From IMG/VR virus record IMGVR_UViG_3300042922_001182, positions 1 through 64,000 of that record: a DNA stretch of 64,000 bases; one strand, written 5' to 3'. Below the pieces are notes generated by a model, which did not search any database, was not told the origin of the DNA, and saw nothing but the letters and a program-made list of their open reading frames with translations. Numbering within the stretch: the first letter of the stretch is position 1; the number at the start of each line of letters is the position of its first letter. A program made the translations under genes and the position numbers. This document shows positions 2,363 to 50,880 of this stretch, piece after piece.

Positions 2363-3736
2363 TTGAAGCTTGAGCTGATAGACCTGGAGGAGCTGTTCGA
2401 CCCCTCCAGGGTCATCACCAACCCCGAGGGCATCAACAAGAACCAGCAGATGAACCCGGATGGCATCTTCTCCGAGGCCATCTTCGGCAAGCTGGAGCAG
2501 GAGAACAGCTCCTACCAGTGCAACTGCGGCGGCACCGTCGGCAAGTTCAACATCAACCAGACCTGCGCCGAGTGCAAGACCCAGGTACGCCTGTCCGAGC
2601 CCCTGGTCAAGCGCATCGCGTGGATCGACATCGGCGACTACTCGGTGCTCAACCCCAACATATACCGCATCCTGGACCGCATCATGCCCAAGAAGGCGCT
2701 GAGCGTCATCCTGTCCTACGAGGTCAAGCTCACCAAGGAGGGCATCCCCGCCGAGCAGGAGAGCACCCTGACCCCGTTCGACAACATCGGCATCATCGAG
2801 TTCCAGGAGCGCTTCGACGAGATCCTCGCCTGGGCTGCCGACAACAGCAAGGCCAGCCCGAAGGTGATCGAGGAGTGCGTGGAGTTCATCGTGAACAACC
2901 GCGACAAGGCCTTCATCAGCAAGGTCCCCGTGTACAGCAGCGTCCTGCGCCCCGCCCGGATGATGGGCAAGTCGTTCGTCTTCGACGAGGTCAACAACCA
3001 GTACAACGCCCTTCTGCGATCCTCCAACCAGATCAAGGAGGCGGCGTCCGAGGAGCTGACCTACGACTTCGCCCTCCCGCTGCTCTGCAACATGCAGCAG
3101 ATCGCCAACGACATCTTCGAGAAGACCGTCGAGAAGCTCCGGGACAAGGCAGGGTTCATCCGTTCCAGCGTGCTCGGGCGACGCATCAACTTCTCCGCCC
3201 GCTGCGTCATCACGCCGCTCCCTGGCGACCGCCCGGTGGACTCCACCGAGCTGCCGTACCTGGCCTTCCTGGAGCTGTACCGCTTCCAGCTGATCAACCT
3301 GATCTGCCAGGTTAAGCGGGTCAACTCCAAGGCGGCGCTGCGCATCTGGAGCCGGGCCCTCACCAAGTTCGACGCCGAGATCTACGAGCTCATGATGCTC
3401 CTGATCGACCGCACGGAGGGCGGCATCCAGCTGCTCCTGAACCGCAACCCGACGATCAACTTCGGCAGCATCGTGAAGCTCCAGGTGACGCACGTCAAGC
3501 GCGACATCGGGGACTACACGGCGTCCATCCACAACCTCGTCCTGCCCCTCCTGGGCGCGGACTACGACGGCGACACCCTCAACTTCATCCCCCTGCTCGA
3601 CCAGGCCCTCTGCCGCGCCTTCGCGGTGTTCAGCCCCCGCCGCATGCTGGTGGACCGGAACGACGGCTCGTTCAACAAGCAGCTGGGCCTGGACAAGGAC
3701 ATGATCCTGGGCATCCACAGCTTCTGCGCCGAGTAG
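2363..3736 (+). CDS. Phage multisubunit RNA polymerase, beta'-like N-terminal subunit containing the catalytic motif
   Basis: TTG start after GAGGA; DGIFSEAIFG, Zn site CNC...CAEC, GRRINFSARCVI, LLNRNPT, and GADYDGD at ~3554-3574; 457 aa, i.e. a split beta'. Confidence 0.93.
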   Translation: MKLELIDLEELFDPSRVITNPEGINKNQQMNPDGIFSEAIFGKLEQENSSYQCNCGGTVGKFNINQTCAECKTQVRLSEPLVKRIAWIDIGDYSVLNPNIYRILDRIMPKKALSVILSYEVKLTKEGIPAEQESTLTPFDNIGIIEFQERFDEILAWAADNSKASPKVIEECVEFIVNNRDKAFISKVPVYSSVLRPARMMGKSFVFDEVNNQYNALLRSSNQIKEAASEELTYDFALPLLCNMQQIANDIFEKTVEKLRDKAGFIRSSVLGRRINFSARCVITPLPGDRPVDSTELPYLAFLELYRFQLINLICQVKRVNSKAALRIWSRALTKFDAEIYELMMLLIDRTEGGIQLLLNRNPTINFGSIVKLQVTHVKRDIGDYTASIHNLVLPLLGADYDGDTLNFIPLLDQALCRAFAVFSPRRMLVDRNDGSFNKQLGLDKDMILGIHSFCAE

Positions 3737-3791: not shown

Positions 3792-3826
3792 CTTTGTGTC
3801 CTGATACGTTATTGGAGGATGATCCC

Positions 3827-4039
3827 ATGAAGCCCAGCACCAACACCGCCGCCCTGGCCGCCGCCCTCCTTGGGGTCGTCATGGCAGCGGACGGCCCCCT
3901 CTACGGCCTCGGCCGATCGCCCGTTGCCAGCTCCCCCTTGGTGGTCTACGGACCCCTCAGGAAGGAGAGGGAGAACCTCAAGAAGCGCGAGTCCCGCAAG
4001 CGCAGCAAGGCCCGCAAGGCCAAGAAAGGCAGCAAGTAA
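3827..4039 (+). CDS. Small protein with hydrophobic N-terminus and very basic tail
   Basis: GGAGG SD before ATG3827; K/R-rich C-terminus. Confidence 0.7.
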   Translation: MKPSTNTAALAAALLGVVMAADGPLYGLGRSPVASSPLVVYGPLRKERENLKKRESRKRSKARKAKKGSK

Positions 4040-4182
4040 TGAACAAGCTCGAAGACGTCGCGGTGGTCGGCCTGGCGGTCGGCTACATGGCCTACAAGAA
4101 GGCCGAGAAGTACCCGGAGATCGCGTTCTGCCTCCTCGTGGTCGGCTACCTGGTGGTAACCGCCTTCGCCGGTCCCTCGTAG
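4039..4182 (+). CDS. 47-aa two-TM membrane protein (not in ORF track)
   Basis: TAATG overlap; MNKLEDVAVVGLAVGYMAYKKAEKYPEIAFCLLVVGYLVVTAFAGPS; typical codon bias. Confidence 0.7.
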   Translation: MNKLEDVAVVGLAVGYMAYKKAEKYPEIAFCLLVVGYLVVTAFAGPS

Positions 4183-4237: not shown

Positions 4238-5512
4238 ATGGCAACAGAGAAGGACGTCTACTCCGCCAGGGCGATGACCTCCGTGTCGGCTACCGTCAGC
4301 AGCCTCACGGGGATCCTCGCCAACGACATCCTGGCATCGGTTTTCCCCAAGGGCTTCTTCAAGAAGTTCAAGCCCGGCACCATCAACATCGGCAGCGCCG
4401 GGGCAGAGGACGAGGACGGGGTCCACCACAGCGCCCTGCCCTACCTGGCGATCGACCCCAGGTACGAGGAGCTCCCGGACCCGCTGTTCGACCCCTCGCC
4501 CCAGGCCAACTGGAAGAGCAGCTTCCTGAGCGCCCCGTTCGGCAGGCACTACCAGAAGGTCCTCGACGACCCGATCAACGGCAGGTTCATCTACGCCATC
4601 GGCAAGCGCATGCGGGTCAACTTCGAGGTCACCATCAAGGTGCAGGGCCGCCTGCAGGTCATGAACGTGCTGCACCACCTGATGTCCTCGTTCGAGCCCG
4701 ACGGCATGTTCTACTTCCAGAACGCCCAGCTGGACGCCAACGTCCCGACGCACTTCATGGAGATGCTGATGGACGCGGCGGAGACCGACAGGGAGTCCCC
4801 GGCGTCCGTCGAGGCCTTCCGGAGCTACGTCAGGATGCACAGCAGGCACATGATCGACCGCAAGCGGGACCTGTCGACCGGCAGGGATGTGTACGTCAAC
4901 GGCTTCCGGACCAACGTGCTGTGGAGCATGAACGGCAAGCCCTCCGGCGAGGCCAACCGCAACGGCGGCTCGGAGGACGGGTCCTCGGTGCAGGTGCAGT
5001 TCTCGGCGGAGCTGTGGTACCCCGCCCGCTATCTCCTGGAGATCCTGGCCGACCCGGACTACTGGGTGCCGAGGCACCCCGATTACGTCCCCGGCGTGGA
5101 CGACCCGGCGGACGGGCCCGGCGACTTCACCTTCCAGTTCAACGCCCAGCGCACCACCATCCCCACCGTCAGCGACGGCAAGTCCCTGGTGGAGAAGGTC
5201 GGGTTCGTAACGGAGGCCGAGGGCGACACGGACACGGTGCCGCTGGACGACGGCGTCCTGCCCGAGACCGCGCTGTACGTCATGAGGTACAACGTCGAGA
5301 AGGGATACGACAACTCCCTGTGCTTCGGGCACCTGCTGCTCAAGGACGGCGAGGAGCTGGACCCGGCCCTGGACTACGAGGTCAGCTACGAGGACAGGCT
5401 CCTCACGCTGTCCCAGCCGTTCCGTGGCTACCCCTACATCCTGGCGTTCTACGCGGACATCCCTAAGGTCAAGGAGAGGTACGACCTCGCCGTGGCAGAG
5501 GGCTTCGAGTAA
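4238..5512 (+). CDS. Hypothetical protein, probably late/virion structural
   Basis: 424 aa, strong AGGAGG SD, preceded by the late-type promoter. Confidence 0.75.
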   Translation: MATEKDVYSARAMTSVSATVSSLTGILANDILASVFPKGFFKKFKPGTINIGSAGAEDEDGVHHSALPYLAIDPRYEELPDPLFDPSPQANWKSSFLSAPFGRHYQKVLDDPINGRFIYAIGKRMRVNFEVTIKVQGRLQVMNVLHHLMSSFEPDGMFYFQNAQLDANVPTHFMEMLMDAAETDRESPASVEAFRSYVRMHSRHMIDRKRDLSTGRDVYVNGFRTNVLWSMNGKPSGEANRNGGSEDGSSVQVQFSAELWYPARYLLEILADPDYWVPRHPDYVPGVDDPADGPGDFTFQFNAQRTTIPTVSDGKSLVEKVGFVTEAEGDTDTVPLDDGVLPETALYVMRYNVEKGYDNSLCFGHLLLKDGEELDPALDYEVSYEDRLLTLSQPFRGYPYILAFYADIPKVKERYDLAVAEGFE

Positions 5513-5515
5513 AGA

Positions 5516-5551
5516 GATGAGAGCAACGACCGCTTGGTCGTTGCTCTCATC
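5516..5551. terminator. Hairpin between convergent genes
   Basis: 16-bp perfect stem GATGAGAGCAACGACC-gctt-GGTCGTTGCTCTCATC. Confidence 0.75.
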
Positions 5552-5559
5552 GTCATCTC

Positions 5560-6255
5560 TTAGAACCTGATCCTGCCACCGGCGCCGACGTACGGCGTGA
5601 TGCCGGACCCGTCGAAGCCGAGGCTGAGGCCGCCCGTGACGAACAGGGGTGTCTCGGGGATCACGACGGAGACGCCCGCCCCCACCTGGGAGAAGTTCAT
5701 CTGCAAGTCGATAGACGCCTCTGGCAGCGCCCCGGGGATGTCCTGACGGACGAGCTGGTAGTCGACGAACACGAGACCGCGCACCACGCCCACGCCGAGG
5801 CCCCACCGGGTCGGGTCGGACAGGTCGGAGCCCGAGGGGCCGAACCTGGGGCCGCTCACGGTCGGGGTGGTGGGGGGAGCACTGGGGGTAACGACCGCAG
5901 CACCAGCCCCCGCGTCGGACCCGGAGGTGGCCGTCTGGTCCTGCTCCACCTCGATCTCCATGTAGGGGACCGGGGTGGCGTGGAGCACGACGCCGTCCTC
6001 CACGTTCGGGATGACGGGGGCGCTGGACCCCTCCGGGGCCGGGGTGGCGACGCGGGTGAGCGGCACGCGGATGACCACCCGCTGCTTGCCGGTGGCGGTG
6101 GCCTGGGCCTTCGCCTGGGCGGACGCCTCGACGGTGGGGACCGGCGGGGCCGACGGGGAGGCGACGGGGGCGGGTCCGGGCTGGGCGAGCAGCACGAACA
6201 GAGCCACCACCGCAGCGGCAGCCGCCGCCAACCAGAGGTAGACCTTCTTGTCCAT
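5560..6255 (-). CDS. Spanin-like membrane protein: N-terminal TM, Pro/Ala linker, beta-strand C-terminus ending in Phe
   Basis: TM at aa ~5-24; C-terminal RWGLGVGV...ITPYVGAGGRIRF; adjacent to holin-like genes. Confidence 0.6.
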   Translation of the reverse strand: MDKKVYLWLAAAAAAVVALFVLLAQPGPAPVASPSAPPVPTVEASAQAKAQATATGKQRVVIRVPLTRVATPAPEGSSAPVIPNVEDGVVLHATPVPYMEIEVEQDQTATSGSDAGAGAAVVTPSAPPTTPTVSGPRFGPSGSDLSDPTRWGLGVGVVRGLVFVDYQLVRQDIPGALPEASIDLQMNFSQVGAGVSVVIPETPLFVTGGLSLGFDGSGITPYVGAGGRIRF

Positions 6256-6281
6256 AACGTTCTCCTTCTCTTCTGGGATGC

Positions 6282-6293
6282 TATCAAAGTGTT
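6282..6293 (-). promoter_or_regulatory. Putative late promoter AACA-N6-TA
   Basis: Minus strand AACActttgaTA, 26 nt before start 6255. Confidence 0.65.
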
Positions 6294-6335
6294 AGGCGCG
6301 ATCGGGGGTTACCCGATCGCGCTCTGATTTTGTCC

Positions 6336-6578
6336 TTAGCCGTCCTGGGGGACGTCGGCCTGCTGGGCCGCCGCCTGGCGCTCGTCGGCCCTCTCCTTGA
6401 AGTAGAAGGCGATGACGGCACCGGCCAGGGCGAGGATGCCCTCGCTGGTGGGGCGACCGTTGACCTCGTTGATGAACACGGGCGCGACCAGGCCCAGGGC
6501 CAGGAGGCCCCTCACGGAGCCCTTGGGTAGACCGAGGGGCTCCGTGCTGTTGAAGATGCGCTTGAACTTGGCGACCAT
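6336..6578 (-). CDS. Small two-TM holin-like protein
   Basis: 80 aa; PLGLPKGSVRGLLAL motif, two hydrophobic segments, charged tail. Confidence 0.6.
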   Translation of the reverse strand: MVAKFKRIFNSTEPLGLPKGSVRGLLALGLVAPVFINEVNGRPTSEGILALAGAVIAFYFKERADERQAAAQQADVPQDG

Positions 6579-6587
6579 GATTCCCTC

Positions 6588-7271
6588 CTACTTGAAAAGC
6601 TTCTCGGAGATGCTGGGCCAGGCCGCCCAGAGACCGGCCACGCCGGTGGCGACGATGCCAGCGCCCTTGGCGGCGATCTCCAGGGCCTTGCTGGAGCCGA
6701 GGAACGCCTTGACGACCTCGACCTTGCCCGCGCCCTCCTCGGCGTCCTTCTTGTCCTTCTTGCCCTTGGCGGCGGCCTCCTCGGCCTTCCTCTCGGCGAG
6801 GGCCTGGGCCTCCTCGGCCTTGGCAACGCGGTCTTCGAGGAGGTCCTCCTTCCAGTCTTCGAGGACGGCGGTCCTCTCGACGAGGGTGTTGACGATCTCG
6901 GTGAGGGGTTCGAGGCGGGCGATCTTGCCCTCGTGCTCCATGATGTGCTCGAACGCGCTGTTCTGCTTCTCCACGAGCTTCTCGATGGAGGAGGTCAGCC
7001 TGGAGATCTCCTTCAGGGACTGGGCCTGCATGAAGGACAGCTCCTTCACCTCCTGGAGGAGGCCCTTGCCCATGTTGTCGATGCCGCCGCTGTAGAGCTC
7101 TATGAGCTTCGCGACGCTCTTGCTGAGGTCGTGGACGTCCCCGGCGGTCTCGTCCTCGTGCTTCGCCTGCCTCTTCGCCAGCGTCTGAACGACCATCAAG
7201 ATGTCCTTGGTCGAGACGCCGTCATCCGGAGTGGCGCCAGTACGGTCGCCCTTCTTGTTACTTCCAGCCAT
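6588..7271 (-). CDS. Coiled-coil protein with C-terminal TM (holin/antiholin-like)
   Basis: Heptad-rich helical body; C-terminal GAGIVATGVAGLWAAWP. Confidence 0.55.
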   Translation of the reverse strand: MAGSNKKGDRTGATPDDGVSTKDILMVVQTLAKRQAKHEDETAGDVHDLSKSVAKLIELYSGGIDNMGKGLLQEVKELSFMQAQSLKEISRLTSSIEKLVEKQNSAFEHIMEHEGKIARLEPLTEIVNTLVERTAVLEDWKEDLLEDRVAKAEEAQALAERKAEEAAAKGKKDKKDAEEGAGKVEVVKAFLGSSKALEIAAKGAGIVATGVAGLWAAWPSISEKLFK

Positions 7272-7355: not shown

Positions 7356-7367
7356 TATCGTAGTGTT
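7356..7367 (-). promoter_or_regulatory. Putative late promoter AACA-N6-TA
   Basis: Minus strand AACActacgaTA upstream of start 7271. Confidence 0.6.
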
Positions 7368-7421
7368 CTCAAGGAAAACCGGGAAAATCGGGGCATGGGC
7401 AGACGCCCATGCCCCGCGCCC

Positions 7422-7946
7422 CTAGACGGGGCTACTCGGATCGTGCTGCAGCTCGTAGCTGGTCTTGTAGATCTGACCGAAATAGGCGACCGCTTCATCC
7501 ATGCGGTTCCAGTACCGCAGGCCGTTGGTGTCCACGGTCCCCAGCGTTCCGTCCGGTCGGAGAAAGCGGCAGATAACGTGGCTCATCTTCAGGCCCGGGT
7601 CGACGATCACCATGAGCTCGGACTCCCAGCCCATCTCCTCGAAGAGGCGTCTGGCGAGCTCTGCATAGTCGTCGCAGTCGATCATGGGCCACCAGTACTT
7701 TTCCTTGCCCTTCTTCCTAGCCCGTAGAATATGGTAGTAGCTCCGTTCAGCCCTCTGGACGAAGTCCAGCATGCCGAAGGGACCATCGCCCGTGTACTTG
7801 AGCTCCTGGATCAGGGAATTGACGTCGTACTCGTTGGAGAGGACGGGGAGGGTCGCCCTCTGCCAGAAGAGAATGGTCGCGATGAGGAACGACCACAGCT
7901 TCTTGGCACGCAGGTAGACCTGCGATAGTTGCTTTGGTTGGAACAT
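7422..7946 (-). CDS. Transglutaminase-like (Cys-His-Asp) peptidase
   Basis: DCDDYA motif, downstream SHVIC and VDTNG. Confidence 0.65.
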   Translation of the reverse strand: MFQPKQLSQVYLRAKKLWSFLIATILFWQRATLPVLSNEYDVNSLIQELKYTGDGPFGMLDFVQRAERSYYHILRARKKGKEKYWWPMIDCDDYAELARRLFEEMGWESELMVIVDPGLKMSHVICRFLRPDGTLGTVDTNGLRYWNRMDEAVAYFGQIYKTSYELQHDPSSPV

Positions 7947-12644: not shown

Positions 12645-14795
12645 CTATATCGTGGTGTTTACCGGGAGCTCGCCCACCTCCATCACGAGGAGCCTACCGG
12701 AGTAGGTCGCCGTACCGCCGGACACCTTCACGCTGATGCCGAAGTCGTGTAGACCTGGAGACGGACAAGCCACAAAGGCCAAGGTGGTTATCGGCATGTA
12801 CTCGTTAGCCGTGGCAGTAGCGTAGTCGTTATCTGCATGGTCGACAACCTCTAGGACTACGCCATCCATATGAGGTTTGATGGACGAGACGGCCGTGGAG
12901 GTGTTGTTGGTCACCTGCCCGGAGAAAAGGAGCAGGATCGGCCTGCCGGAGCAGTCCATGTAGGCCCTGTCGCCGACGGGAACGGGGGTGAGGCTGGTGG
13001 TGGTGACCGCGCTGTAGCTCACAGAAGAGTTCTGCCTCTTCTTGTCGTGGTGCTTCCTCTCGTGCTCTCTCAAGACGGAGATCAACGCATCCTTACCAAG
13101 GGGGTCCGTCTCGCGCAGGTCCTTCACGTAGGGGATGGCAGGCCTGACCTCGATGCAGTCGATGTTGATTGCGTAGCCCGTTGCTGAGGAATGCTTTGCA
13201 TTCGTGGTACGCACCGTGACGGTGTGGTAGCCGCCGTGGGGGAGGGTGCCGGAGGTGTACTGGACCGCATCGAACAGCTGAACTGGGTCGTAGGTAGTCA
13301 CCTGCGCGGTCAGGACGCCGTCCACAAGGACGTCGTACCAGCCCCCGACGGCCGGACCCTTGTTCCCCCTCAGCCTGAACTTGTCCCCGGTGAAGCCGAA
13401 GGTCAGGGTGTCCGTGGTGTTGGTGTTAGCGTTGTTCCAGGTGGTGCCCATGGACAGCGGCTCGTTGGTGTTGAGCAGCCAGTTAGCACCTTCCTGCAAG
13501 CCGAGCTCGGTGCTCTCGTGCCTTATCCATGCGTCCGAGGGGTACTGCACCGCCTCGCAGAGCGCCATGGCATCCGACGGAACATCTGGGGCCTTCGGGT
13601 GATAGACATTGTAGCCACCGATCAGGATGCTGTAGCCGGAAGAGCTGGCGTTCTTCGTGCCGGTCTTCCTCACCTTCAGCTGGTGGTAGCCGAAAGGGAG
13701 GTTGTAGGCGAGTACCTGCGTCCTGGCGGTATCGACGAGAGAATACGCGTCGACGGTGGTCTCCGCCCCTCCGTCGATGGACCACGCGAATATGCCCCGC
13801 TGGGACTGCCCGTTGAAGAGAATCTCGATCCCCGTGCCGATGAAGCCGATCACCTGGAAGTCCACGCCGGTCGCGTCGTCAGCTGCGGGCCCGGGGCCTC
13901 CCAGCCGGATCAGCTTGGGGTTGACGTCAAGCGTCGACGCGTTGGTGGAGTAGACCCGGCCGAGCACGCCCGTGCCGTCGCTGGCCCCGATGTGGAAGGC
14001 GACCTCGCTCTTAGAGAGGAACGTCGCAAGGCTGTCGCCCGCGCTGGTGGGATCCCCCTGGATCACCTCCGGGGCTTCGGCCCCCGCCCTCAGAATGACC
14101 AAGTCCCTTCGGGCGCTGGCCGTCCCGAGGGTCGGAAGGGAGAGGGTACCGGCGAGGACGCTGGTAGGGCGGACTTTGATGAACGCCGTTCCGGCCTTAT
14201 ACGCCAAAGTGCTGTCCAGACCGCGCACGACGTCGAAGCCCTCGATGCGGACCACCATGTCCGTGGCCGACGCGTTCTTGCTGCTGGAGACGGTGATGAC
14301 CGTGGTATGGGGCCCGTTGTTCAACCCGGAGGCGATAAGCCTTGGAATGCCGTCGATCGCGCTGTTGTTCCAGTTGTCGTACTGCACGGAAGCGCCTCCA
14401 TCCGTGGAGACCGTGTACATGCCGGAGCCGCCCCATCGGGTGCTGTAGATTACCAGGTCGGTACCCTCCCAGTTGATCGTCAGCTGCTGACCCGCCCGCC
14501 CCGTGAAGACCCTGAAGTTCAGCCCGACCTGGGGCAGGGCGGGGTTATTCCCGGCAGGGGTCCCCGCGTACCCAGGGAGGCCGAAGAACGGGCTGTGCGA
14601 CGCGGTCCATGAGGAGGACCCCTTGATGGAGAGTCGGTCGTCGTCGAAGACGAGCTCGTTCGTCAGGGGCTCCCAGTACGCGTTCAGGCTGATGCGCTCG
14701 ATGCCCGCCATGACGCGGATGTCATCTTGCGACAGGACAGTGTCGCGAAGCACGCCCTGGAGGGGTGAAAGGTCAAGCACTTCTTCCTGGATCAT
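12645..14795 (-). CDS. Tail-associated receptor-binding protein, paralog 1 of 3
   Basis: Same architecture (RRDLVILRAG..PEVIQG, YNLPxGYH, KNASS); 716 aa. Confidence 0.75.
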   Translation of the reverse strand: MIQEEVLDLSPLQGVLRDTVLSQDDIRVMAGIERISLNAYWEPLTNELVFDDDRLSIKGSSSWTASHSPFFGLPGYAGTPAGNNPALPQVGLNFRVFTGRAGQQLTINWEGTDLVIYSTRWGGSGMYTVSTDGGASVQYDNWNNSAIDGIPRLIASGLNNGPHTTVITVSSSKNASATDMVVRIEGFDVVRGLDSTLAYKAGTAFIKVRPTSVLAGTLSLPTLGTASARRDLVILRAGAEAPEVIQGDPTSAGDSLATFLSKSEVAFHIGASDGTGVLGRVYSTNASTLDVNPKLIRLGGPGPAADDATGVDFQVIGFIGTGIEILFNGQSQRGIFAWSIDGGAETTVDAYSLVDTARTQVLAYNLPFGYHQLKVRKTGTKNASSSGYSILIGGYNVYHPKAPDVPSDAMALCEAVQYPSDAWIRHESTELGLQEGANWLLNTNEPLSMGTTWNNANTNTTDTLTFGFTGDKFRLRGNKGPAVGGWYDVLVDGVLTAQVTTYDPVQLFDAVQYTSGTLPHGGYHTVTVRTTNAKHSSATGYAINIDCIEVRPAIPYVKDLRETDPLGKDALISVLREHERKHHDKKRQNSSVSYSAVTTTSLTPVPVGDRAYMDCSGRPILLLFSGQVTNNTSTAVSSIKPHMDGVVLEVVDHADNDYATATANEYMPITTLAFVACPSPGLHDFGISVKVSGGTATYSGRLLVMEVGELPVNTTI

Positions 14796-43719: not shown

Positions 43720-44048
43720 TCGAGGGTATCCAGGTCGGCTTCCCACTGGGTAAGATGGTCCTCCGAGTGAAGGGCAACACCATCGCCGGGGAATGCCCCA
43801 TGGGCCCGGTTAGCGGCACGCTGTCGGACGAGGGTGTACTCCTGGAGGGCCGTGGGTTCAGCGTCCGCCTGACCCTGGAGGAGTTCGCCCTGCTCGCCGG
43901 GAACAAGCTCATGTACGACGCCTCCTGGAAGATCGCGGAGACCAAGCTGAGCGAGCTTCCGTTCCGCAACCAGCTCTTCATGACCTTCAGGCAGGGCGCG
44001 GAATTCCTGGCGAAGAAACTTAGGAGGATCTCCGGCTATGATCATTAA
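43716..44048 (+). CDS. Hypothetical protein
   Basis: ATGA overlap; GGAGG SD. Confidence 0.7.
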   Translation: MIEGIQVGFPLGKMVLRVKGNTIAGECPMGPVSGTLSDEGVLLEGRGFSVRLTLEEFALLAGNKLMYDASWKIAETKLSELPFRNQLFMTFRQGAEFLAKKLRRISGYDH

Positions 44049-44757
44049 GAACGTCGACACCAAGGGCAAGCGCTACGCCGACATCACCCACCTGTTCGGG
44101 GAGCGCCTGGTCACCATCAACGGCCACATGGCGGTGGACCTCCACGCGGCCAACAAGCAGAAGCACGAGGGGCGCGGTCGCGCCAAGTGCGTCACCTTCC
44201 ACTGGCTGGCGACCGACTGGGACTGCGCCTACGACGACTACGACTACGTCATCGTCTTCTGCTCGAAGACCCGCAAGGTCTACGTCCTCAAGTGCGTGAA
44301 GAGCGGCGACAAGCCTCAGCACTGCTGGGGCCGCAACAGCAACACCATCGCCATCGGCCTAGCCGGTATGCACGGCGCGAGCGGCCCCAACGCCCTCGGC
44401 CGCTACGCCATCCAGGACGAGCAGCTCTGGATCGCCGCCCAGCTGGCCGGTGAGATCTGCGCTATGAAGGGCATCGACCCCCACCAGCTGGTCGAGATGC
44501 CCGAGCTCAAGTGCAACAGGGCGCAGACCGTGATCAGCCCGACCGGCAAGACCATCATGGTCCCCGCGATCAACGACCACGCCCTGTTCGCCAAGCACGA
44601 CGGCTACGGCAACGCCCGCTGGGACTGCACCCCCTACATCGCCAAGCTCCGCAAGGACGCCACCCGCGTCTACGACGAGCTGAAGGGCGCGTCCAAGGGA
44701 GTCAAGAAGCTGGGCACCGACGACGCCCGCTCCTTCGAGTTCGCCGAGATCCTGTGA
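44038..44757 (+). CDS. N-acetylmuramoyl-L-alanine amidase (amidase-2-like)
   Basis: VTFHW, HCWGRNSNTIAIGL, DEQL, NDHA, RWD motifs. Confidence 0.7.
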   Translation: MIIKNVDTKGKRYADITHLFGERLVTINGHMAVDLHAANKQKHEGRGRAKCVTFHWLATDWDCAYDDYDYVIVFCSKTRKVYVLKCVKSGDKPQHCWGRNSNTIAIGLAGMHGASGPNALGRYAIQDEQLWIAAQLAGEICAMKGIDPHQLVEMPELKCNRAQTVISPTGKTIMVPAINDHALFAKHDGYGNARWDCTPYIAKLRKDATRVYDELKGASKGVKKLGTDDARSFEFAEIL

Positions 44758-45302: not shown

Positions 45303-45530
45303 ATGCCGATGACAGAGGAACAGGCCCGCGCCATGAAGACCGGGGACCTCGTCCGGGAGGACGAGACCGGAGGCCTGTGGGAGCTCGTGGCCCGCATCGT
45401 TCCATACCCCGATATGGAGAACGAGCTGACCGGCTACGTGCGTCTGAACAGCGACAAGGAGACCCTCAAGCACTTCAGCAGGGACTCGCTGGAGCGATAC
45501 ACCCCCGTACTTCCATCTAAGAGGAAGTGA
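45303..45530 (+). CDS. Hypothetical protein
   Basis: GGAGGTG SD; 75 aa. Confidence 0.7.
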   Translation: MPMTEEQARAMKTGDLVREDETGGLWELVARIVPYPDMENELTGYVRLNSDKETLKHFSRDSLERYTPVLPSKRK

Positions 45531-45634
45531 CCATAGGCCCAACGCCCAAGGCGTTGGGCCGGTTTAATCCGCGAGGAGTCGCGGGAACTACGCATTATGC
45601 CTATGGCACAAGCGTAGGAAGGAGAAATGCAACA

Positions 45635-46333
45635 GTGAACGCAAGAACACCGCACTACCGACAGCAGCTGTCCATATGGCTCCTGGCCGTGCTTCTGTCC
45701 CTCGCCCTCTTCGGGGTGGTGGGGCACACGCTGAACCAGAGCCGCCCGGAGCCCGTCAGGCCCGCCCCCGTGGACGGCCCCAGGCCCAAGGACACGCCCA
45801 AGGTGGTGCCCATCCCGTCCGTCCTCCCCAAGCCCAAGCCCCGGCCGCACGGCCCCGTCTGGGAGTACGTCTACAGCAGCACGGTGGAGCACCAGGGGAG
45901 GGGCAAGGCCCGCGAGAAGGCCGACATGTACGCCCTGCCCATCTACACCAAGGCCGTCAAGTACCGGATCAGCCCGATCCTGGTGGCGTCCCTGGTGAAG
46001 ACCGAGAGCCACTTCGACCGGTTCGCCGTGTCCAGCGCGGGGGCCCTCGGTCTAGCGCAGATCATGCCGTTCCACTTCGAGTCGCACGGCTACAGCCTCT
46101 CCAGGTGGAAGGACCCGTGGGTCAACATGGAGATCAGCTGCAGGCTGCTGCACGGCTTCCGCAGGGACCTGAGCAAGAGGTTCCCGGGGTCGTCGGACCT
46201 GGCGGTGAAGAACATGATGCTCGTGGCCTACAACATGGGCCAGGGCGCGGTGGTCAACCGGGGGATCCGGAGCAGCCACTACAGCAGGACGGTCATCCGC
46301 GACGCCAAGCCGAGACCGGTCAAGTACATCTGA
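45635..46333 (+). CDS. Membrane-anchored lytic transglycosylase (SLT family)
   Basis: N-terminal TM, Pro-rich linker, KTESHF..AVSSAGALGLAQIMP, AYNMG. Confidence 0.85.
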   Translation: MNARTPHYRQQLSIWLLAVLLSLALFGVVGHTLNQSRPEPVRPAPVDGPRPKDTPKVVPIPSVLPKPKPRPHGPVWEYVYSSTVEHQGRGKAREKADMYALPIYTKAVKYRISPILVASLVKTESHFDRFAVSSAGALGLAQIMPFHFESHGYSLSRWKDPWVNMEISCRLLHGFRRDLSKRFPGSSDLAVKNMMLVAYNMGQGAVVNRGIRSSHYSRTVIRDAKPRPVKYI

Positions 46334-48528: not shown

Positions 48529-50880
48529 ATGTCCAACATCACCAAGGTGTCCACCACCGTCGGCGGCCAGCCCGCCGTCCTGCTCCACATCTCCCACAAG
48601 CAGGAGGAGCAGGTGAAGGAGGAGGTGAGCGTCGACTCCCTGCACTTCATCGAGATCGTGGACCGGTCCTACTCCATGAGCGGCAACCTGCGGGAGCTGG
48701 GCAACCACGTCTACCAGTCCACCCAGGCGATGGGCCCGAACGACCGCTTCAGCCTCATCTGGTTCGCCGGTGAGGGCCAGTACCGCACCGTCTTCAAGGG
48801 CGCGAAGCGGGACGACGAGGGCCTGCGGGTCATGATCGACGAGATCATCAGCCCGGTGGGCCTGACCTGCTTCTCGGAGTCGCTCCAGGAGGCCGAGGTC
48901 ATCATGAAGGAGCTGGCGAAGCTCTGCCCCAACTTCGTCCTCGGCCTCTTCACCGACGGCGAGCCCGTCGTCTCGTGGGGCGCCGCCGAGGAGATGAAGC
49001 GCTGCCTCGACATCGCCGCCCGCATCGGCGGCACCGCCCTCGCCCTGAACTGCATCGGCTACGGCTACAACTACGACATGGACTTCCTCAAGGGCCTGTC
49101 GGCCAAGACCCAGTTCGGCCAGGCCGTCCACAGCTCCAAGATCGAGGACTTCACGGAGATCTTCCGCCACAACTACGAGCGCGTCTCGGACCTGGTGGTG
49201 GACACCCTGGACGTGGTCGGCCCCAGCTGCGACGACATCGTCTACATCGGCTCCAAGAACTCCAAGCTGACCGTCAACAAGCTCGGCGACGGCAACGTCA
49301 ACCGGCTGCACCTCACCGCCCTCGACAAGCGCAAGAACCAGGTCCTCCTGGTCCTCCGGCCCGGCGGCGACGGCAAGGTCAACGGCCTCGTCGAATACAA
49401 CGGTGCCACCATCGACGTCAACTCCCTCAAGGAGGGCAAGCTGCGCGAGGACACCCTCCGCAACGCCCTCTACGCCTACGCCCACGAGCTGTACTACGCC
49501 GGACGCCGTCAGGAGGCCCTGGACGTGCTCGCCCACGACCTCGGCGACAGGTTCCTGGTCGACTCCCAGTTCCAGGCGTTCACCCGCGACGAGGTCGCCG
49601 AGCACAGCGCGAAGCTTCGCAAGGCGGCTTTCGACACCAAGGCCCGCTTCCTCGGCGGCACCTGCTCCAAGGACTACCTACCCGCAGCCGACGCCCCGTG
49701 CGTCTACGGCCTGCTGCGCACCCTGGCGGCCAGCTCCCGTGCCTGGTACCTCCCGGACGAGAAGGGCTACAAGCGCATCGGCCTCAAGGCCGTCGACTCC
49801 TACAACCTGTTCAAGGCGGACGTCTCGCACGTCCCGATGGCCCCCTTCAGCGACCTCGTGTTCAACGAGGAGCACCTGAACGTCTCCCTCCGCTGGTCCA
49901 AGCAGGGCACGGTCGCCATCAACCCCAGGACCGCCGAGCGCGTCGGCCTCCCCACCGACTTCCCCACCCAGATCTACCGCGTCCACACGGTGGTCAAGGA
50001 CGGCGAGCTGCACACCCCCCGCATCTGGGCGGTCGTCGGCGAGGACGTGATGGAGATCCTGGACACCGTCTACCCCGGGATCGTCCTCAAGACGTCCCCG
50101 TCCGCTAACGTCGACAGGAACGACTTCAAGGGCAAGGACGGCTCGGTCGAGGCCGGGTTCGACGTCCCCTACCACGACGTCTTCCTGGACCTGTCGGTGC
50201 TCCCCGTCATCAACCGCTCCTACCTGGAGAGCAGTCGGGACACCCGCTCCGTTCTCGCCCAGGTCGTCCACCTCAACGAGCTCAAGGCCGAGCAGAAGGT
50301 GCTGAAGCACTACCTGAAGGCCATGACCGAGGCCACCAACGTCGCGAAGGACCGCGTCGGCGGCGGCTACAACAAGGAGCAGATGGAGGTCCTGCTGGAG
50401 AACGGTCTCGATTACAGCCTGAACTACAGCGGCGTCAAGCGCGAGGTCGAGAAGAAGAACGAGGAGGACTTCTACGAGATCCGCACCCTGACCCTCCAGC
50501 TCGCCGGGTGGTCCAGCCTCCCGAAGGTCGAGGACGTGATCGCGTCCCTGGACGGCGTCTCCGGCAAGAAGCTCAACGGCCCCGGCACCCAGATGGCCAA
50601 GATCATCGAGGAGCTGCGCTCGGAGGAGGTCGCCCTCGACAAGAAGCCCACCGTGGAGCAGTCGCGCTTCATCGAGGGATGCCTGAGGACGGTCAAGAAC
50701 TCCATCCTGCGCACCAGCGCGGATCTGGCCGCCATGAAGCTCGCCAAGGTGTTGACCGGCGATTGGTTCGACGGCGCCGTCCCCAACGACAAGGGTCAGT
50801 ACGTCTTCGCCTCCGACATCGGCGGCGTCGAGCGCCAGCTCGTGATCAAGGCAGGTCGCGAGAAGCAGTACTTCTCCTAA
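48529..50880 (+). CDS. von Willebrand factor A (vWA) domain protein
   Basis: MIDAS motif DRSYSM, conserved T, FTDG, IGYG; 783 aa. Confidence 0.85.
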   Translation: MSNITKVSTTVGGQPAVLLHISHKQEEQVKEEVSVDSLHFIEIVDRSYSMSGNLRELGNHVYQSTQAMGPNDRFSLIWFAGEGQYRTVFKGAKRDDEGLRVMIDEIISPVGLTCFSESLQEAEVIMKELAKLCPNFVLGLFTDGEPVVSWGAAEEMKRCLDIAARIGGTALALNCIGYGYNYDMDFLKGLSAKTQFGQAVHSSKIEDFTEIFRHNYERVSDLVVDTLDVVGPSCDDIVYIGSKNSKLTVNKLGDGNVNRLHLTALDKRKNQVLLVLRPGGDGKVNGLVEYNGATIDVNSLKEGKLREDTLRNALYAYAHELYYAGRRQEALDVLAHDLGDRFLVDSQFQAFTRDEVAEHSAKLRKAAFDTKARFLGGTCSKDYLPAADAPCVYGLLRTLAASSRAWYLPDEKGYKRIGLKAVDSYNLFKADVSHVPMAPFSDLVFNEEHLNVSLRWSKQGTVAINPRTAERVGLPTDFPTQIYRVHTVVKDGELHTPRIWAVVGEDVMEILDTVYPGIVLKTSPSANVDRNDFKGKDGSVEAGFDVPYHDVFLDLSVLPVINRSYLESSRDTRSVLAQVVHLNELKAEQKVLKHYLKAMTEATNVAKDRVGGGYNKEQMEVLLENGLDYSLNYSGVKREVEKKNEEDFYEIRTLTLQLAGWSSLPKVEDVIASLDGVSGKKLNGPGTQMAKIIEELRSEEVALDKKPTVEQSRFIEGCLRTVKNSILRTSADLAAMKLAKVLTGDWFDGAVPNDKGQYVFASDIGGVERQLVIKAGREKQYFS

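What the first reader, a model, noticed from the sequence alone, without database searches (positions are those of the whole stretch)
5560..7271. Lysis-like cassette with a candidate single-chain spanin anchored by a C-terminal beta-barrel-type domain
Seen: three late-promoter-driven membrane genes. 5560..6255 has an N-terminal TM with no lipobox Cys, a ~120-aa Pro/Ala/Thr extended linker, and ~80 aa of amphipathic strands (RWGLGVGV...TPYVGAGGRIRF) ending in Phe. Known: a terminal Phe strand is the BAM signal of outer-membrane barrels; described spanins use a lipoprotein OM anchor (Rz/Rz1, T1 gp11). Inference: an inverted unimolecular spanin (inner-membrane helix plus oligomeric OM barrel), implying a diderm host and a non-canonical route to OM disruption.
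Basis: partly seen in the sequence, partly recalled or inferred. Interest (0 to 1): 0.7.

Follow-up and report, generated by a model that had tools for sequence, protein, structure and literature searches.

The report
Phage envelope protein with barrel-like tail
A soil jumbo phage carries, next to holin-like genes, a gene from a small undescribed family whose protein has a membrane helix at one end and an outer-membrane-barrel-like domain at the other; it may be a new way for phages to break the outer membrane, but neither its function nor its host is shown.

Summary
Gene 5560..6255(-) is real (GC3 0.93, Shine-Dalgarno site, own AR9-type late-promoter motif, strong terminator). It encodes an N-terminal hydrophobic helix with no lipobox, a Pro/Ala/Thr-rich spacer, and six amphipathic C-terminal strands ending G-x-R-x-R-F.

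New here:
- It belongs to a family of 7 sequences, all from metagenomic phage contigs, with no Pfam, PHROG or PDB match.
- On the C-terminal strands the polar/Gly face is conserved and the hydrophobic face varies. The last strand fits the BAM beta-signal. Fold searches return mostly outer-membrane barrels, all weakly.
- In three or four divergent relatives of this AR9/phiR1-37-like jumbo phage, the gene is the last in the same module: coiled-coil protein with C-terminal TM, then a small multi-TM protein, then this gene.
- No lipobox ORF, so no canonical o- or u-spanin, was found in the 239-kb genome.

Not shown:
- whether the N-terminal helix is retained or cleaved;
- the oligomeric state (the trimer prediction gave no answer);
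- the host (soil metagenome);
- any role in lysis.

A plain 8-stranded phage outer-membrane protein is a serious rival. Verdict: partly supported, moderately interesting, a new variant of a known kind if it acts as a spanin.

The parts
5516..5551 (-). Intrinsic-terminator-like hairpin (16-bp stem plus a T-rich tail) that ends the transcription unit. It lies between the convergent 231-aa and 424-aa genes.
   Evidence: sequence
5560..6255 (-). Gene for P0001 (231 aa), the founding member seen here of a 7-sequence phage family.
   Evidence: (GC3 0.93)
6184..6243 (-). Codons for residues 5-24: an Ala-rich hydrophobic helix. It is either a signal-anchor or a long signal peptide; there is no lipobox.
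   Evidence: helix 3-23, pLDDT about 72
6058..6087 (-). Codons for residues 57-66: conserved strand 'Q-x-V-T-V-R-I-P' (V60 and P65 invariant).
5926..5964 (-). Codons for residues 98-110: conserved strand 'I-E-V-E-V-T-Q'. Its charges are mostly opposite to those of strand 57-66 (R63/E104 in four members, D63/K104 in P0012).
5563..5826 (-). Codons for residues 144-231: motif SDLxDxxRWG followed by six amphipathic strands, ending G226-x-R228-x-R-F231. This is the barrel-like domain.
   Evidence: (pLDDT 74-87)
6282..6293 (-). AR9-type late-promoter-like motif AACACTTTGATA, 27 nt upstream of the ATG at 6255.
6295..6323 (.). 12-bp GC-rich hairpin between the 80-aa and 231-aa genes. It has no T-tract on the minus strand, so it may be a partial terminator or an RNA-stability element.
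6336..6578 (-). 80-aa protein with two TM segments and a charged C-terminal tail. Holin-like, with class II architecture.
   Evidence: PHROG 4237 holin, E 0.0029, weak
6588..7271 (-). 227-aa (or 202-aa, from ATG 7196) coiled-coil protein with one Gly-rich C-terminal TM segment. XhlA-like in architecture only.
   Evidence: ESM features: XhlA, DUF1515, DUF7201; scores 0.85-0.86, a lead only
7356..7367 (-). AR9-type late-promoter-like motif AACACTACGATA upstream of the 227-aa gene.
7375..7415 (-). Hairpin GGGGCATGGGC-GTCT-GCCCATGCCCC followed by GATTTTCCCGGTTTT, after the 174-aa gene. It is a likely terminator that separates the tail-fibre operon from the membrane-gene module. The scan did not flag it because its window holds 4 T, not 5.
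   Evidence: read directly
7422..7946 (-). 174-aa protein P0002 with an invariant Cys91-His123-Asp139. Transglutaminase-like cysteine-peptidase fold by ESM Atlas. It is the last gene of the upstream tail-fibre operon, and its role in lysis is unproven.

Best explanation
P0001 is the outer-envelope component of a conserved, late-transcribed, lysis-type membrane module of an AR9/phiR1-37-like jumbo phage.

Proposed mechanism:
1. Two AACA-(6N)-TA late promoters drive the coiled-coil tail-anchored protein plus the 2-TM holin-like protein, and separately P0001.
2. P0001 is targeted to Sec by its N-terminal helix, which stays in the inner membrane as a signal-anchor.
3. The Pro/Ala/Thr spacer of about 125 residues, with its charged beta-hairpin, crosses the periplasm.
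4. The BAM machinery recognises the C-terminal 85-residue domain through its G-x-x-Phi-x-F end and inserts it into the outer membrane as a beta-barrel-type element.
5. When the holin fires and the wall is cut, this two-membrane tether disrupts the outer membrane. That would make it a functional analogue of a unimolecular spanin with reversed polarity and a protein anchor instead of a lipid anchor.

Shown: gene reality, the family, the architecture, the inside-out conservation, the fit to the beta-signal, the promoter motif, the conserved gene order, and the absence of lipobox ORFs.

Inferred: Sec export, retention of the helix, insertion into the outer membrane, a diderm host, and any role in lysis.
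For: - Real gene: GC3 0.93.
- Family of 7 with the same architecture.
- Six strands predicted at pLDDT 74-87.
- The polar/Gly face has 14 of 28 positions invariant (entropy 0.60); the hydrophobic face has 4 of 29 (entropy 1.16). Hydrophobicity and variability correlate at Spearman 0.57, p 4e-6.
- The last strand V-G-A-G-L-R-L-R-F meets positions Phi0, G3, Phi6 and Omega8 of the published beta-signal (PMC10945584). Arg and Lys are the commonest penultimate residues in 22,447 outer-membrane-protein ends (PMC3582582).
- Fold and feature searches return de novo TM barrels, OprF-N, Tsx, CarO, PagL, phage opacity-like and cyanophage outer-membrane proteins.
- The module order coiled-coil+TM, then TM protein, then family member recurs in L010/L011, L012/L013 and the P0011 contig. 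In L010 and L012 the stop and start codons overlap, and the coiled-coil partners are homologous at E 2e-9. L010 and L012 belong to the same phage clade as the window.
- Late-promoter motif.
- No lipobox ORF in 239 kb.
- A different protein of this phage, at genome 65358-66017, has a short canonical signal peptide with a polar c-region. P0001 lacks such a c-region.
Against: - No experiment, and the host is unknown (soil metagenome).
- There is no detectable homology to any spanin, holin or XhlA family at curated thresholds.
- Every structural match is weak (best Foldseek E 0.011-0.047; VIA Z 5-6 for outer-membrane proteins).
- Six strands cannot form a known monomeric outer-membrane barrel, and the trimer prediction gave no support.
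- 5-6 of 7 members carry small-x-small sites at the end of the helix, so it may be cleaved.
- Charge flanks around the helix are nearly balanced, and reversed in P0011.
- In the L008/L016/L005 lineage the gene sits between primase and RNase HII, next to an 89-aa soluble-looking protein rather than holin-like genes.
- The SLT muramidase candidate is 40 kb away.
Confidence: 0.38

Rival explanations
1. An ordinary phage-encoded small outer-membrane protein. The N-terminal helix is a cleaved Sec signal peptide. The two conserved spacer strands (57-66, 98-110) join the six C-terminal strands to form a monomeric 8-stranded barrel with a long variable surface loop (67-97) and a long periplasmic turn (111-150). 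Its function would resemble that of Lom/Ail or cyanophage outer-membrane proteins (surface modification, superinfection exclusion), or be an undefined outer-membrane role, not a two-membrane tether.
For: - The total length of the N-terminal segment (23-33 aa) is in the range of signal peptides, and A-V-A|G, V-A-A|G, G-V-A|G and L-L-A|Q sites sit at its end.
- The spacer strands are amphipathic, conserved, and mostly opposite in charge, as expected for neighbouring strands with an R/E-lined lumen.
- Conserved lumen-face Gly and packed polar residues suit a narrow barrel.
- The best viral structural match is a 179-aa phage opacity-type outer-membrane protein.
- ESM features point to the Phage_OMP family.
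- In one lineage the gene lies among replication genes, not in a lysis context.
- In lambda, bor lies next to the lysis cassette without taking part in lysis (own knowledge).
Against: - Pfam Phage_OMP, OMP_b-brl and all other families fail to match.
- The spacer strands show the opposite conservation pattern to the C-terminal strands: their hydrophobic face is conserved and their polar face variable. They have only about 3 lipid-facing hydrophobic residues and low model confidence (pLDDT 40-53).
- The hydrophobic stretch is 17-20 residues long with no polar c-region, unlike the canonical signal peptide of another protein of the same phage.
- Translational coupling to the holin-like gene in two relatives argues for a joint function.
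Confidence: 0.3
2. The host is monoderm, or the domain is simply not membrane-inserted. P0001 is then a cytoplasmic-membrane-anchored protein with an extracytoplasmic soluble beta-sandwich or small closed beta-barrel. That domain would bind cell wall or regulate the holin/XhlA-like pair, as accessory proteins do in the lysis cassettes of Firmicutes and Actinobacteria phages.
For: - The AR9/PBS1 and Staphylococcus relatives of this phage group infect Gram-positive hosts.
- XhlA-type partners are typical of Bacillus prophages (ESM lead; own knowledge).
- The best structural Z score (8.6) is to a soluble designed 6-strand barrel (PMC12478100).
- phmmer also picked up PKD and SpaA Ig-like repeat proteins.
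- High GC plus a soil origin fits Actinobacteria.
Against: - A soluble barrel or sandwich should conserve its hydrophobic core and vary its polar surface. The opposite is seen.
- The invariant terminal Phe together with the G-x-x-Phi-x-F pattern would have no explanation.
- The PKD and SpaA hits belong to two different folds, cross domain boundaries, and owe their E-values to 5-10 tandem repeats.
- Family members occur in phages of 47-65% GC from lakes and soil, which is hard to fit to one Gram-positive clade.
Confidence: 0.15

Closest known systems
Unimolecular spanin T1 gp11 (u-spanins; Kongari et al. 2018, PMC6139136)
   Same: A single chain proposed to connect the inner and outer membranes. 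Its periplasmic part is predicted to be mainly beta, it has no periplasmic Cys, and it is encoded next to holin-type genes. Canonical two-component spanins are absent from the same genome.
   Different: [quoted passage not shown] P0001 has the TM helix at the N-terminus, no lipobox, and a beta-barrel-like C-terminus. P0001 is also larger (231 aa). There is no sequence similarity.
Small 8-stranded outer-membrane barrels, including phage-encoded ones (OmpX/Ail/Lom, PagL, OprF-N; Pfam OMP_b-brl, Phage_OMP PF24653)
   Same: Amphipathic strands rich in Gly, a conserved polar lumen face, a terminal aromatic beta-signal, and weak structural and feature-level matches.
   Different: No HMM match. Only six strands are confidently predicted, within 85 residues. 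A spacer of about 125 residues and a long uninterrupted hydrophobic N-terminus come before them.
TonB/TolA-type envelope-spanning proteins (own knowledge)
   Same: An N-terminal signal-anchor in the inner membrane, a Pro-rich periplasm-spanning spacer, and a C-terminal domain of about 90 residues that engages the outer membrane.
   Different: The TonB C-domain is a mixed alpha/beta fold that docks onto receptors and is not inserted. P0001's C-domain is all-beta with a membrane-type surface. There is no homology.
XhlA-XhlB-type lysis modules of Bacillus prophages/phages and the phiKZ lysis cassette (PMC12894885)
   Same: A tail-anchored coiled-coil protein next to a small holin-like protein, in a late gene cluster of a large phage. 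In phiKZ, an extra regulator sits beside the holin.
   Different: The partner proteins here do not reach any family threshold. phiKZ uses a canonical i-spanin and o-spanin, and no such genes are found here.

Membership tests
Unimolecular spanin (T1 gp11 type) | N-terminal outer-membrane lipoprotein signal (lipobox ending in Cys) | tested here: not met
   P0001 has no Cys. Three relatives have a Cys after the helix, but in the contexts K-R-C, K-S-C and R-S-C, which are not lipoboxes. A genome-wide lipobox scan found no credible ORF.
Unimolecular spanin (T1 gp11 type) | C-terminal transmembrane domain in the inner membrane | tested here: not met
   The only hydrophobic helix is N-terminal, at residues 5-24.
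Unimolecular spanin (T1 gp11 type) | Encoded in a lysis cassette with holin and endolysin | tested here: inconclusive
   The neighbours are holin-like and XhlA-like by architecture and weak scores only. The SLT candidate is 40 kb away. The adjacent 174-aa Cys-His-Asp protein has no characterised function.
Unimolecular spanin (T1 gp11 type) | Complements lambda Rz/Rz1 defects; needed for outer-membrane disruption | not testable with these tools
   This requires a bench experiment.
BAM-dependent outer-membrane beta-barrel protein | C-terminal beta-signal zeta-x-G-x-x-[aromatic/hydrophobic]-x-[aromatic/hydrophobic] with a terminal aromatic residue | tested here: met
   The family consensus is V-G-A-G-L-R-L-R-F. 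G226, R228 and F231 are invariant; only the polar 'zeta' position is Gly/Ala.
BAM-dependent outer-membrane beta-barrel protein | Even number (8 or more) of amphipathic TM strands with a variable lipid face and a conserved lumen face | tested here: inconclusive
   Six strands show the expected inside-out pattern. Two further candidate strands show the opposite pattern at low confidence. The test for oligomerisation gave no answer.
BAM-dependent outer-membrane beta-barrel protein | Cleavable Sec signal peptide | tested here: inconclusive
   A hydrophobic N-terminus is present. Cleavage could not be judged without SignalP or DeepTMHMM; possible small-x-small sites occur in 5-6 of 7 members.
BAM-dependent outer-membrane beta-barrel protein | Host has an outer membrane with BamA | not testable with these tools
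   The host is unknown (soil metagenome). No relatives were found in 185,579 reference genomes.
Pfam Phage_OMP (PF24653) / OMP_b-brl (PF13505) | HMM match above the gathering threshold | tested here: not met
   No hit even at E 10. The only link is an ESM feature-level resemblance of 0.89.
XhlA family (PF10779), for the 227-aa neighbour | HMM match; short coiled-coil protein with a C-terminal TM next to the holin | tested here: not met
   There is no Pfam hit. The architecture matches and the ESM feature score is 0.85. The L010 counterpart hits PHROG 937 'hemolysin' only at E 0.095.

The most novel reading that the evidence does not exclude
P0001 and its relatives are a new class of outer-membrane-disrupting lysis protein: a single chain anchored in the inner membrane by an N-terminal helix and in the outer membrane by a BAM-inserted, possibly oligomeric, beta-barrel element. 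It would work with an XhlA-like/holin pair in jumbo phages that lack lipoprotein spanins.
Probability: 0.22. Interest if true: 0.8.

Novelty: new variant of a known kind. Interest (0 to 1): 0.55.

Why it matters
About 13% of phages of Gram-negative hosts have no recognisable spanin (PMC6139136), and how they breach the outer membrane is an open question. A protein-anchored, reversed-polarity tether would be a third solution, beside lipoprotein spanins and cationic disruptins. It would also be a rare case of one polypeptide embedded in both membranes, and it would give a search model (helix, Pro-rich spacer, short barrel ending in Phe) for annotating lysis genes in uncultivated jumbo phages. 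The terminal beta-signal would also serve as a host-envelope marker for viral contigs with no known host. If the protein is instead a plain phage outer-membrane protein, the result is a new but ordinary family.

Tried and rejected
- The k-mer protein search found only the query itself. With the family profile it was swamped by low-complexity words.
- tblastn and megablast against 50,697 phage genomes found nothing for the region, P0001, P0002 or the 699-aa fibre-like protein.
- Scans of GTDB genomes found no relative of P0001 or of the 424-aa structural protein, so there is no prophage or host clue.
- The IMG/VR and metagenome scans added only one new sequence.
- The single-sequence AlphaFold model was useless.
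- The trimer prediction for residues 50-231 scored 0.00, 'no answer'.
- The PKD (P0010) and SpaA (P0009) repeat proteins found by phmmer were rejected as relatives. They are two unrelated folds, the alignment crosses domain borders, and the scores are inflated by repeats.
- The cyanophage idea was rejected as untestable: there is no psbA and no Phage_OMP match.
- The 74-aa/128-aa membrane pair at genome 146883-147480 was considered as a holin plus i-spanin. It was rejected because the basic cluster after the helix of the 128-aa protein predicts a cytoplasmic C-domain, and the pair lies among early genes.
- Positional-replacement test: five distant relatives of the 424-aa protein (28-31% GC) have no comparable cassette nearby, so this was uninformative.
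- 'Relatives' of a virus record cannot be drawn.
- Twenty further proteins scanned for host-derived genes gave only replication proteins and a chaperonin.
Full report
**Where the window lies.** The window is the first 64 kb of a complete IMG/VR viral genome of 238,984 bp. It has a 127-bp terminal repeat, 63.5% GC and one tRNA-Arg(CCT). The only sequencing run that holds it is a soil metagenome. The conserved 424-aa protein at 4238..5512 has distant relatives (21-31% identity) in the uracil-DNA, two-RNA-polymerase jumbo phages AR9/PBS1, the Staphylococcus jumbo phages and Yersinia phiR1-37. The order RpoC-N fragment, small gene, 424-aa protein matches phiR1-37 g274-g272. This group infects both Gram-positive and Gram-negative hosts, so the relationship says nothing about the envelope of this phage's host.

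**Checking the observation.**
- The three minus-strand ORFs are present, and their third-position GC of 0.93-0.96 marks them as coding.
- P0001 (5560..6255) has a strong Shine-Dalgarno site. It is followed by a 16-bp-stem terminator at 5551..5516.
- Its upstream region and that of the 227-aa gene both carry AACAC-N3-GATAGC. The core AACA-N4-GATA occurs 3 times in the window against 0.32 expected. It occurs 10 times in the genome, 9 of them intergenic and 38-171 nt upstream of a gene on the same strand.
- The motif is a special case of the experimentally defined AR9 late promoter AACA-(6N)-TA/G (PMC5312081).
- The 'late-promoter-driven' remark is therefore reasonable, but there are two promoters for three genes. 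A hairpin at 6295-6323 separates the 80-aa gene from P0001.
- The 174-aa gene upstream belongs to the preceding tail-fibre operon and is followed by its own terminator-like hairpin.

**The protein and its family.**
- No Pfam, PHROG or PDB family matches P0001.
- An exhaustive phmmer search with residues 136-231 found five proteins of 209-249 aa with the domain at their very C-terminus. A metagenome scan added a sixth.
- All seven share a hydrophobic Ala/Gly-rich N-terminal stretch of 17-20 residues, with no lipobox. They also share a low-complexity spacer with two conserved strands ('VTVRIP' and 'IEVEVTQ'), the motif SDLxDxxRWG, and about 85 residues ending G-x-R-x-R-F.
- With this 7-row alignment AlphaFold2 predicts six strands (152-158, 161-171, 180-186, 190-198, 204-213, 219-230) at pLDDT 74-87. 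The rest of the chain is poorly modelled.

**Is the C-domain a membrane barrel?** The most telling result is the distribution of conservation.
- On the six strands the polar/Gly face holds 14 invariant positions out of 28, with mean entropy 0.60.
- The hydrophobic face holds 4 out of 29, with mean entropy 1.16.
- Hydrophobicity and variability correlate at Spearman 0.57, p 4e-6.
- This is the reverse of a soluble beta domain. It is the pattern expected for lipid-facing versus lumen-facing residues.

Two further lines agree with this.
- The last nine residues (V-G-A-G-L-R-L-R-F) meet four of the five defined positions of the BAM beta-signal (PMC10945584). Arg or Lys is the commonest penultimate residue in outer-membrane proteins (PMC3582582).
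- Structure and feature searches lean towards outer-membrane barrels: designed TM barrels, OprF-N, Tsx, CarO, OmpW, PagL, a phage opacity-type protein and a cyanophage outer-membrane protein.
- All of these matches are weak. The single best VIA match (Z 8.6) is a soluble designed six-strand barrel, BBn6 (PMC12478100), so the monomer model simply closes on itself.

**What is not settled about the barrel.**
- Six strands are too few for any known monomeric outer-membrane barrel.
- A trimer prediction for residues 50-231 returned 'no answer'.
- The alternative is that the two spacer strands complete an 8-stranded barrel. They are amphipathic and mostly opposite in charge (R63/E104 in four members, D63/K104 in one). 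However, they conserve their hydrophobic face and are modelled with low confidence.

**Genomic context.**
- In L010/L011 (47% GC), in L012/L013 (64% GC, a 245-kb contig) and on the P0011 contig, the family member is the last gene of the same string. The order is a CheY-like receiver protein, a coiled-coil protein with a C-terminal TM segment, a small multi-TM protein, and then the member.
- In L010 and L012 the member's start codon overlaps the stop of the TM-protein gene.
- The coiled-coil proteins of L010 and L012 are homologous (E 2e-9). The window's 227-aa protein shares only the architecture.
- Both contigs carry homologues of the window's 424-aa protein at 31-32% identity, so this is a conserved module of one jumbo-phage clade.
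- L010 also has an AACA-(6N)-TG motif after a hairpin, upstream of its module.
- The 227-aa protein resembles XhlA, DUF1515 and DUF7201 proteins only at the level of ESM features. The 80-aa protein hits a holin PHROG at E 0.003. The 174-aa protein has an invariant Cys-His-Asp triad and a transglutaminase-like fold.
- These features make a lysis-type module plausible, not proven.

**Evidence against a lysis-only reading.**
- A second lineage (L005-L009, L016; its record is a 35%-complete fragment, so probably also a jumbo phage) has the gene between primase and RNase HII. There it is preceded by an 89-aa soluble-looking protein.
- The clearest peptidoglycan hydrolase of the phage is an SLT-domain protein with its own hydrophobic segment and a Pro-rich linker, at 45527..46333.

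**Spanins.** A scan of every ORF of 35 aa or more, in all six frames of the genome, found no credible lipobox. The few hits are antisense artefacts. The one other protein with an N-terminal TM segment and a helical domain (genome 147094-147480) has a basic cluster after the helix, which predicts a cytoplasmic domain. By the criteria of Kongari et al. (PMC6139136) the phage is therefore 'spanin-less'. Either the host has no outer membrane, or another protein does the job.

**Anchor or signal peptide?**
- I could not run a signal-peptide predictor.
- For an anchor: the stretch is 17-20 uninterrupted hydrophobic residues without a polar c-region. This differs from the canonical signal peptide of another protein of this phage, MSRKTYIGFFIALFITLFCDASFA|W.
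- For cleavage: 5-6 of 7 members have small-x-small sites at the end of the stretch, and the total length (23-33 aa) is compatible.
- If the helix is retained and only the last 85 residues enter the outer membrane, the spacer of about 125 residues is long enough to cross a periplasm. If the 8-strand model holds, only 33-50 residues would remain, which is short for E. coli-type spacing. The two questions are therefore linked.

**Verdict.**
It is compatible with all the data.
- I give 0.38 to the tethered, lysis-associated model and about 0.22 to its strict form.
- I give 0.30 to a plain phage outer-membrane protein, and 0.15 to a non-inserted extracytoplasmic domain in a monoderm host.
- The family itself is new by sequence.

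Noticed in passing
window 45527-46333 (+); also 44038-44757 (+): The 268-aa ORF has an SLT lytic-transglycosylase domain (E 2e-17). Before it come a hydrophobic segment (QQLSIWLLAVLLSLALFGVV) and a Pro-rich linker, so this may be a membrane-tethered or SAR-type endolysin. The start codon is uncertain. The nearby 239-aa ORF has a weak Amidase_2 hit (E 0.002).
   Followed up: partly
whole genome; in the window at 6282-6293, 7356-7367 and 12648-12659 (all minus strand): AACA-N4-GATA is a strongly intergenic motif: 9 of 10 copies lie 38-171 nt upstream of genes. It matches the AR9 late-promoter consensus, which suggests that this high-GC soil phage keeps the AR9-type non-virion RNA polymerase promoter code.
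   Followed up: partly
window 2363-3736 (+), 3794-4182 (+), 4238-5512 (+): The order is an RNA polymerase beta-prime N-terminal fragment (ADYDGD motif), two small hydrophobic ORFs (81 and 47 aa), and a 424-aa conserved virion-type protein. This is syntenic with phiR1-37 g274-g272.
   Followed up: partly
window 7422-7946 (-); relatives in L001, L002/L003, L004: The 174-aa protein family has an invariant WPMIDCDDYA...SH...VDTNG (Cys-His-Asp) and a transglutaminase-like fold. It occurs in unrelated phage contigs next to different genes, once beside a secreted M10-type metallopeptidase.
   Followed up: partly
L010:6398-6901, L012:6574-7068 and the P0011 contig: A stand-alone CheY-like receiver-domain protein (Response_reg, E 3e-19) directly precedes the coiled-coil/TM/family-member module in the relatives. 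It is absent from the window.
   Followed up: no
L008:7742-8011, L005:108-377, L016 (about 750-1024): A conserved 89-aa beta-rich protein without a hydrophobic segment is encoded immediately before, and overlapping, the family member in the lake-phage lineage. Its function is unknown.
   Followed up: no
genome 146883-147480 (outside the window): A 74-aa protein with two TM segments is followed by an overlapping 128-aa protein with one N-terminal TM segment. The pair lies between an RNA-polymerase-like gene and a helicase gene. It is not spanin-like by charge topology.
   Followed up: partly
genome 186612-188366 (L025:612-2366): A divergent GroEL-type chaperonin (Cpn60_TCP1, E 3.5e-28).
   Followed up: no
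genome 65358-66017 (L018:5358-6017): A 219-aa helical protein with a textbook cleavable signal peptide (…CDASFA|W). The phage therefore does export at least one protein through Sec.
   Followed up: no
G001 (IMGVR_UViG_3300010354_000069), positions 50123-50422: An SLT domain lies inside an open frame of 5,866 aa, a giant virion-type protein. The record is only about 35% complete, which implies that the lake-phage lineage carrying the family is also of jumbo size.
   Followed up: no
genome 150407-151051 (outside the window): A 214-aa protein with a long (DQQ)n / (DGDQQ)n acidic repeat.
   Followed up: no
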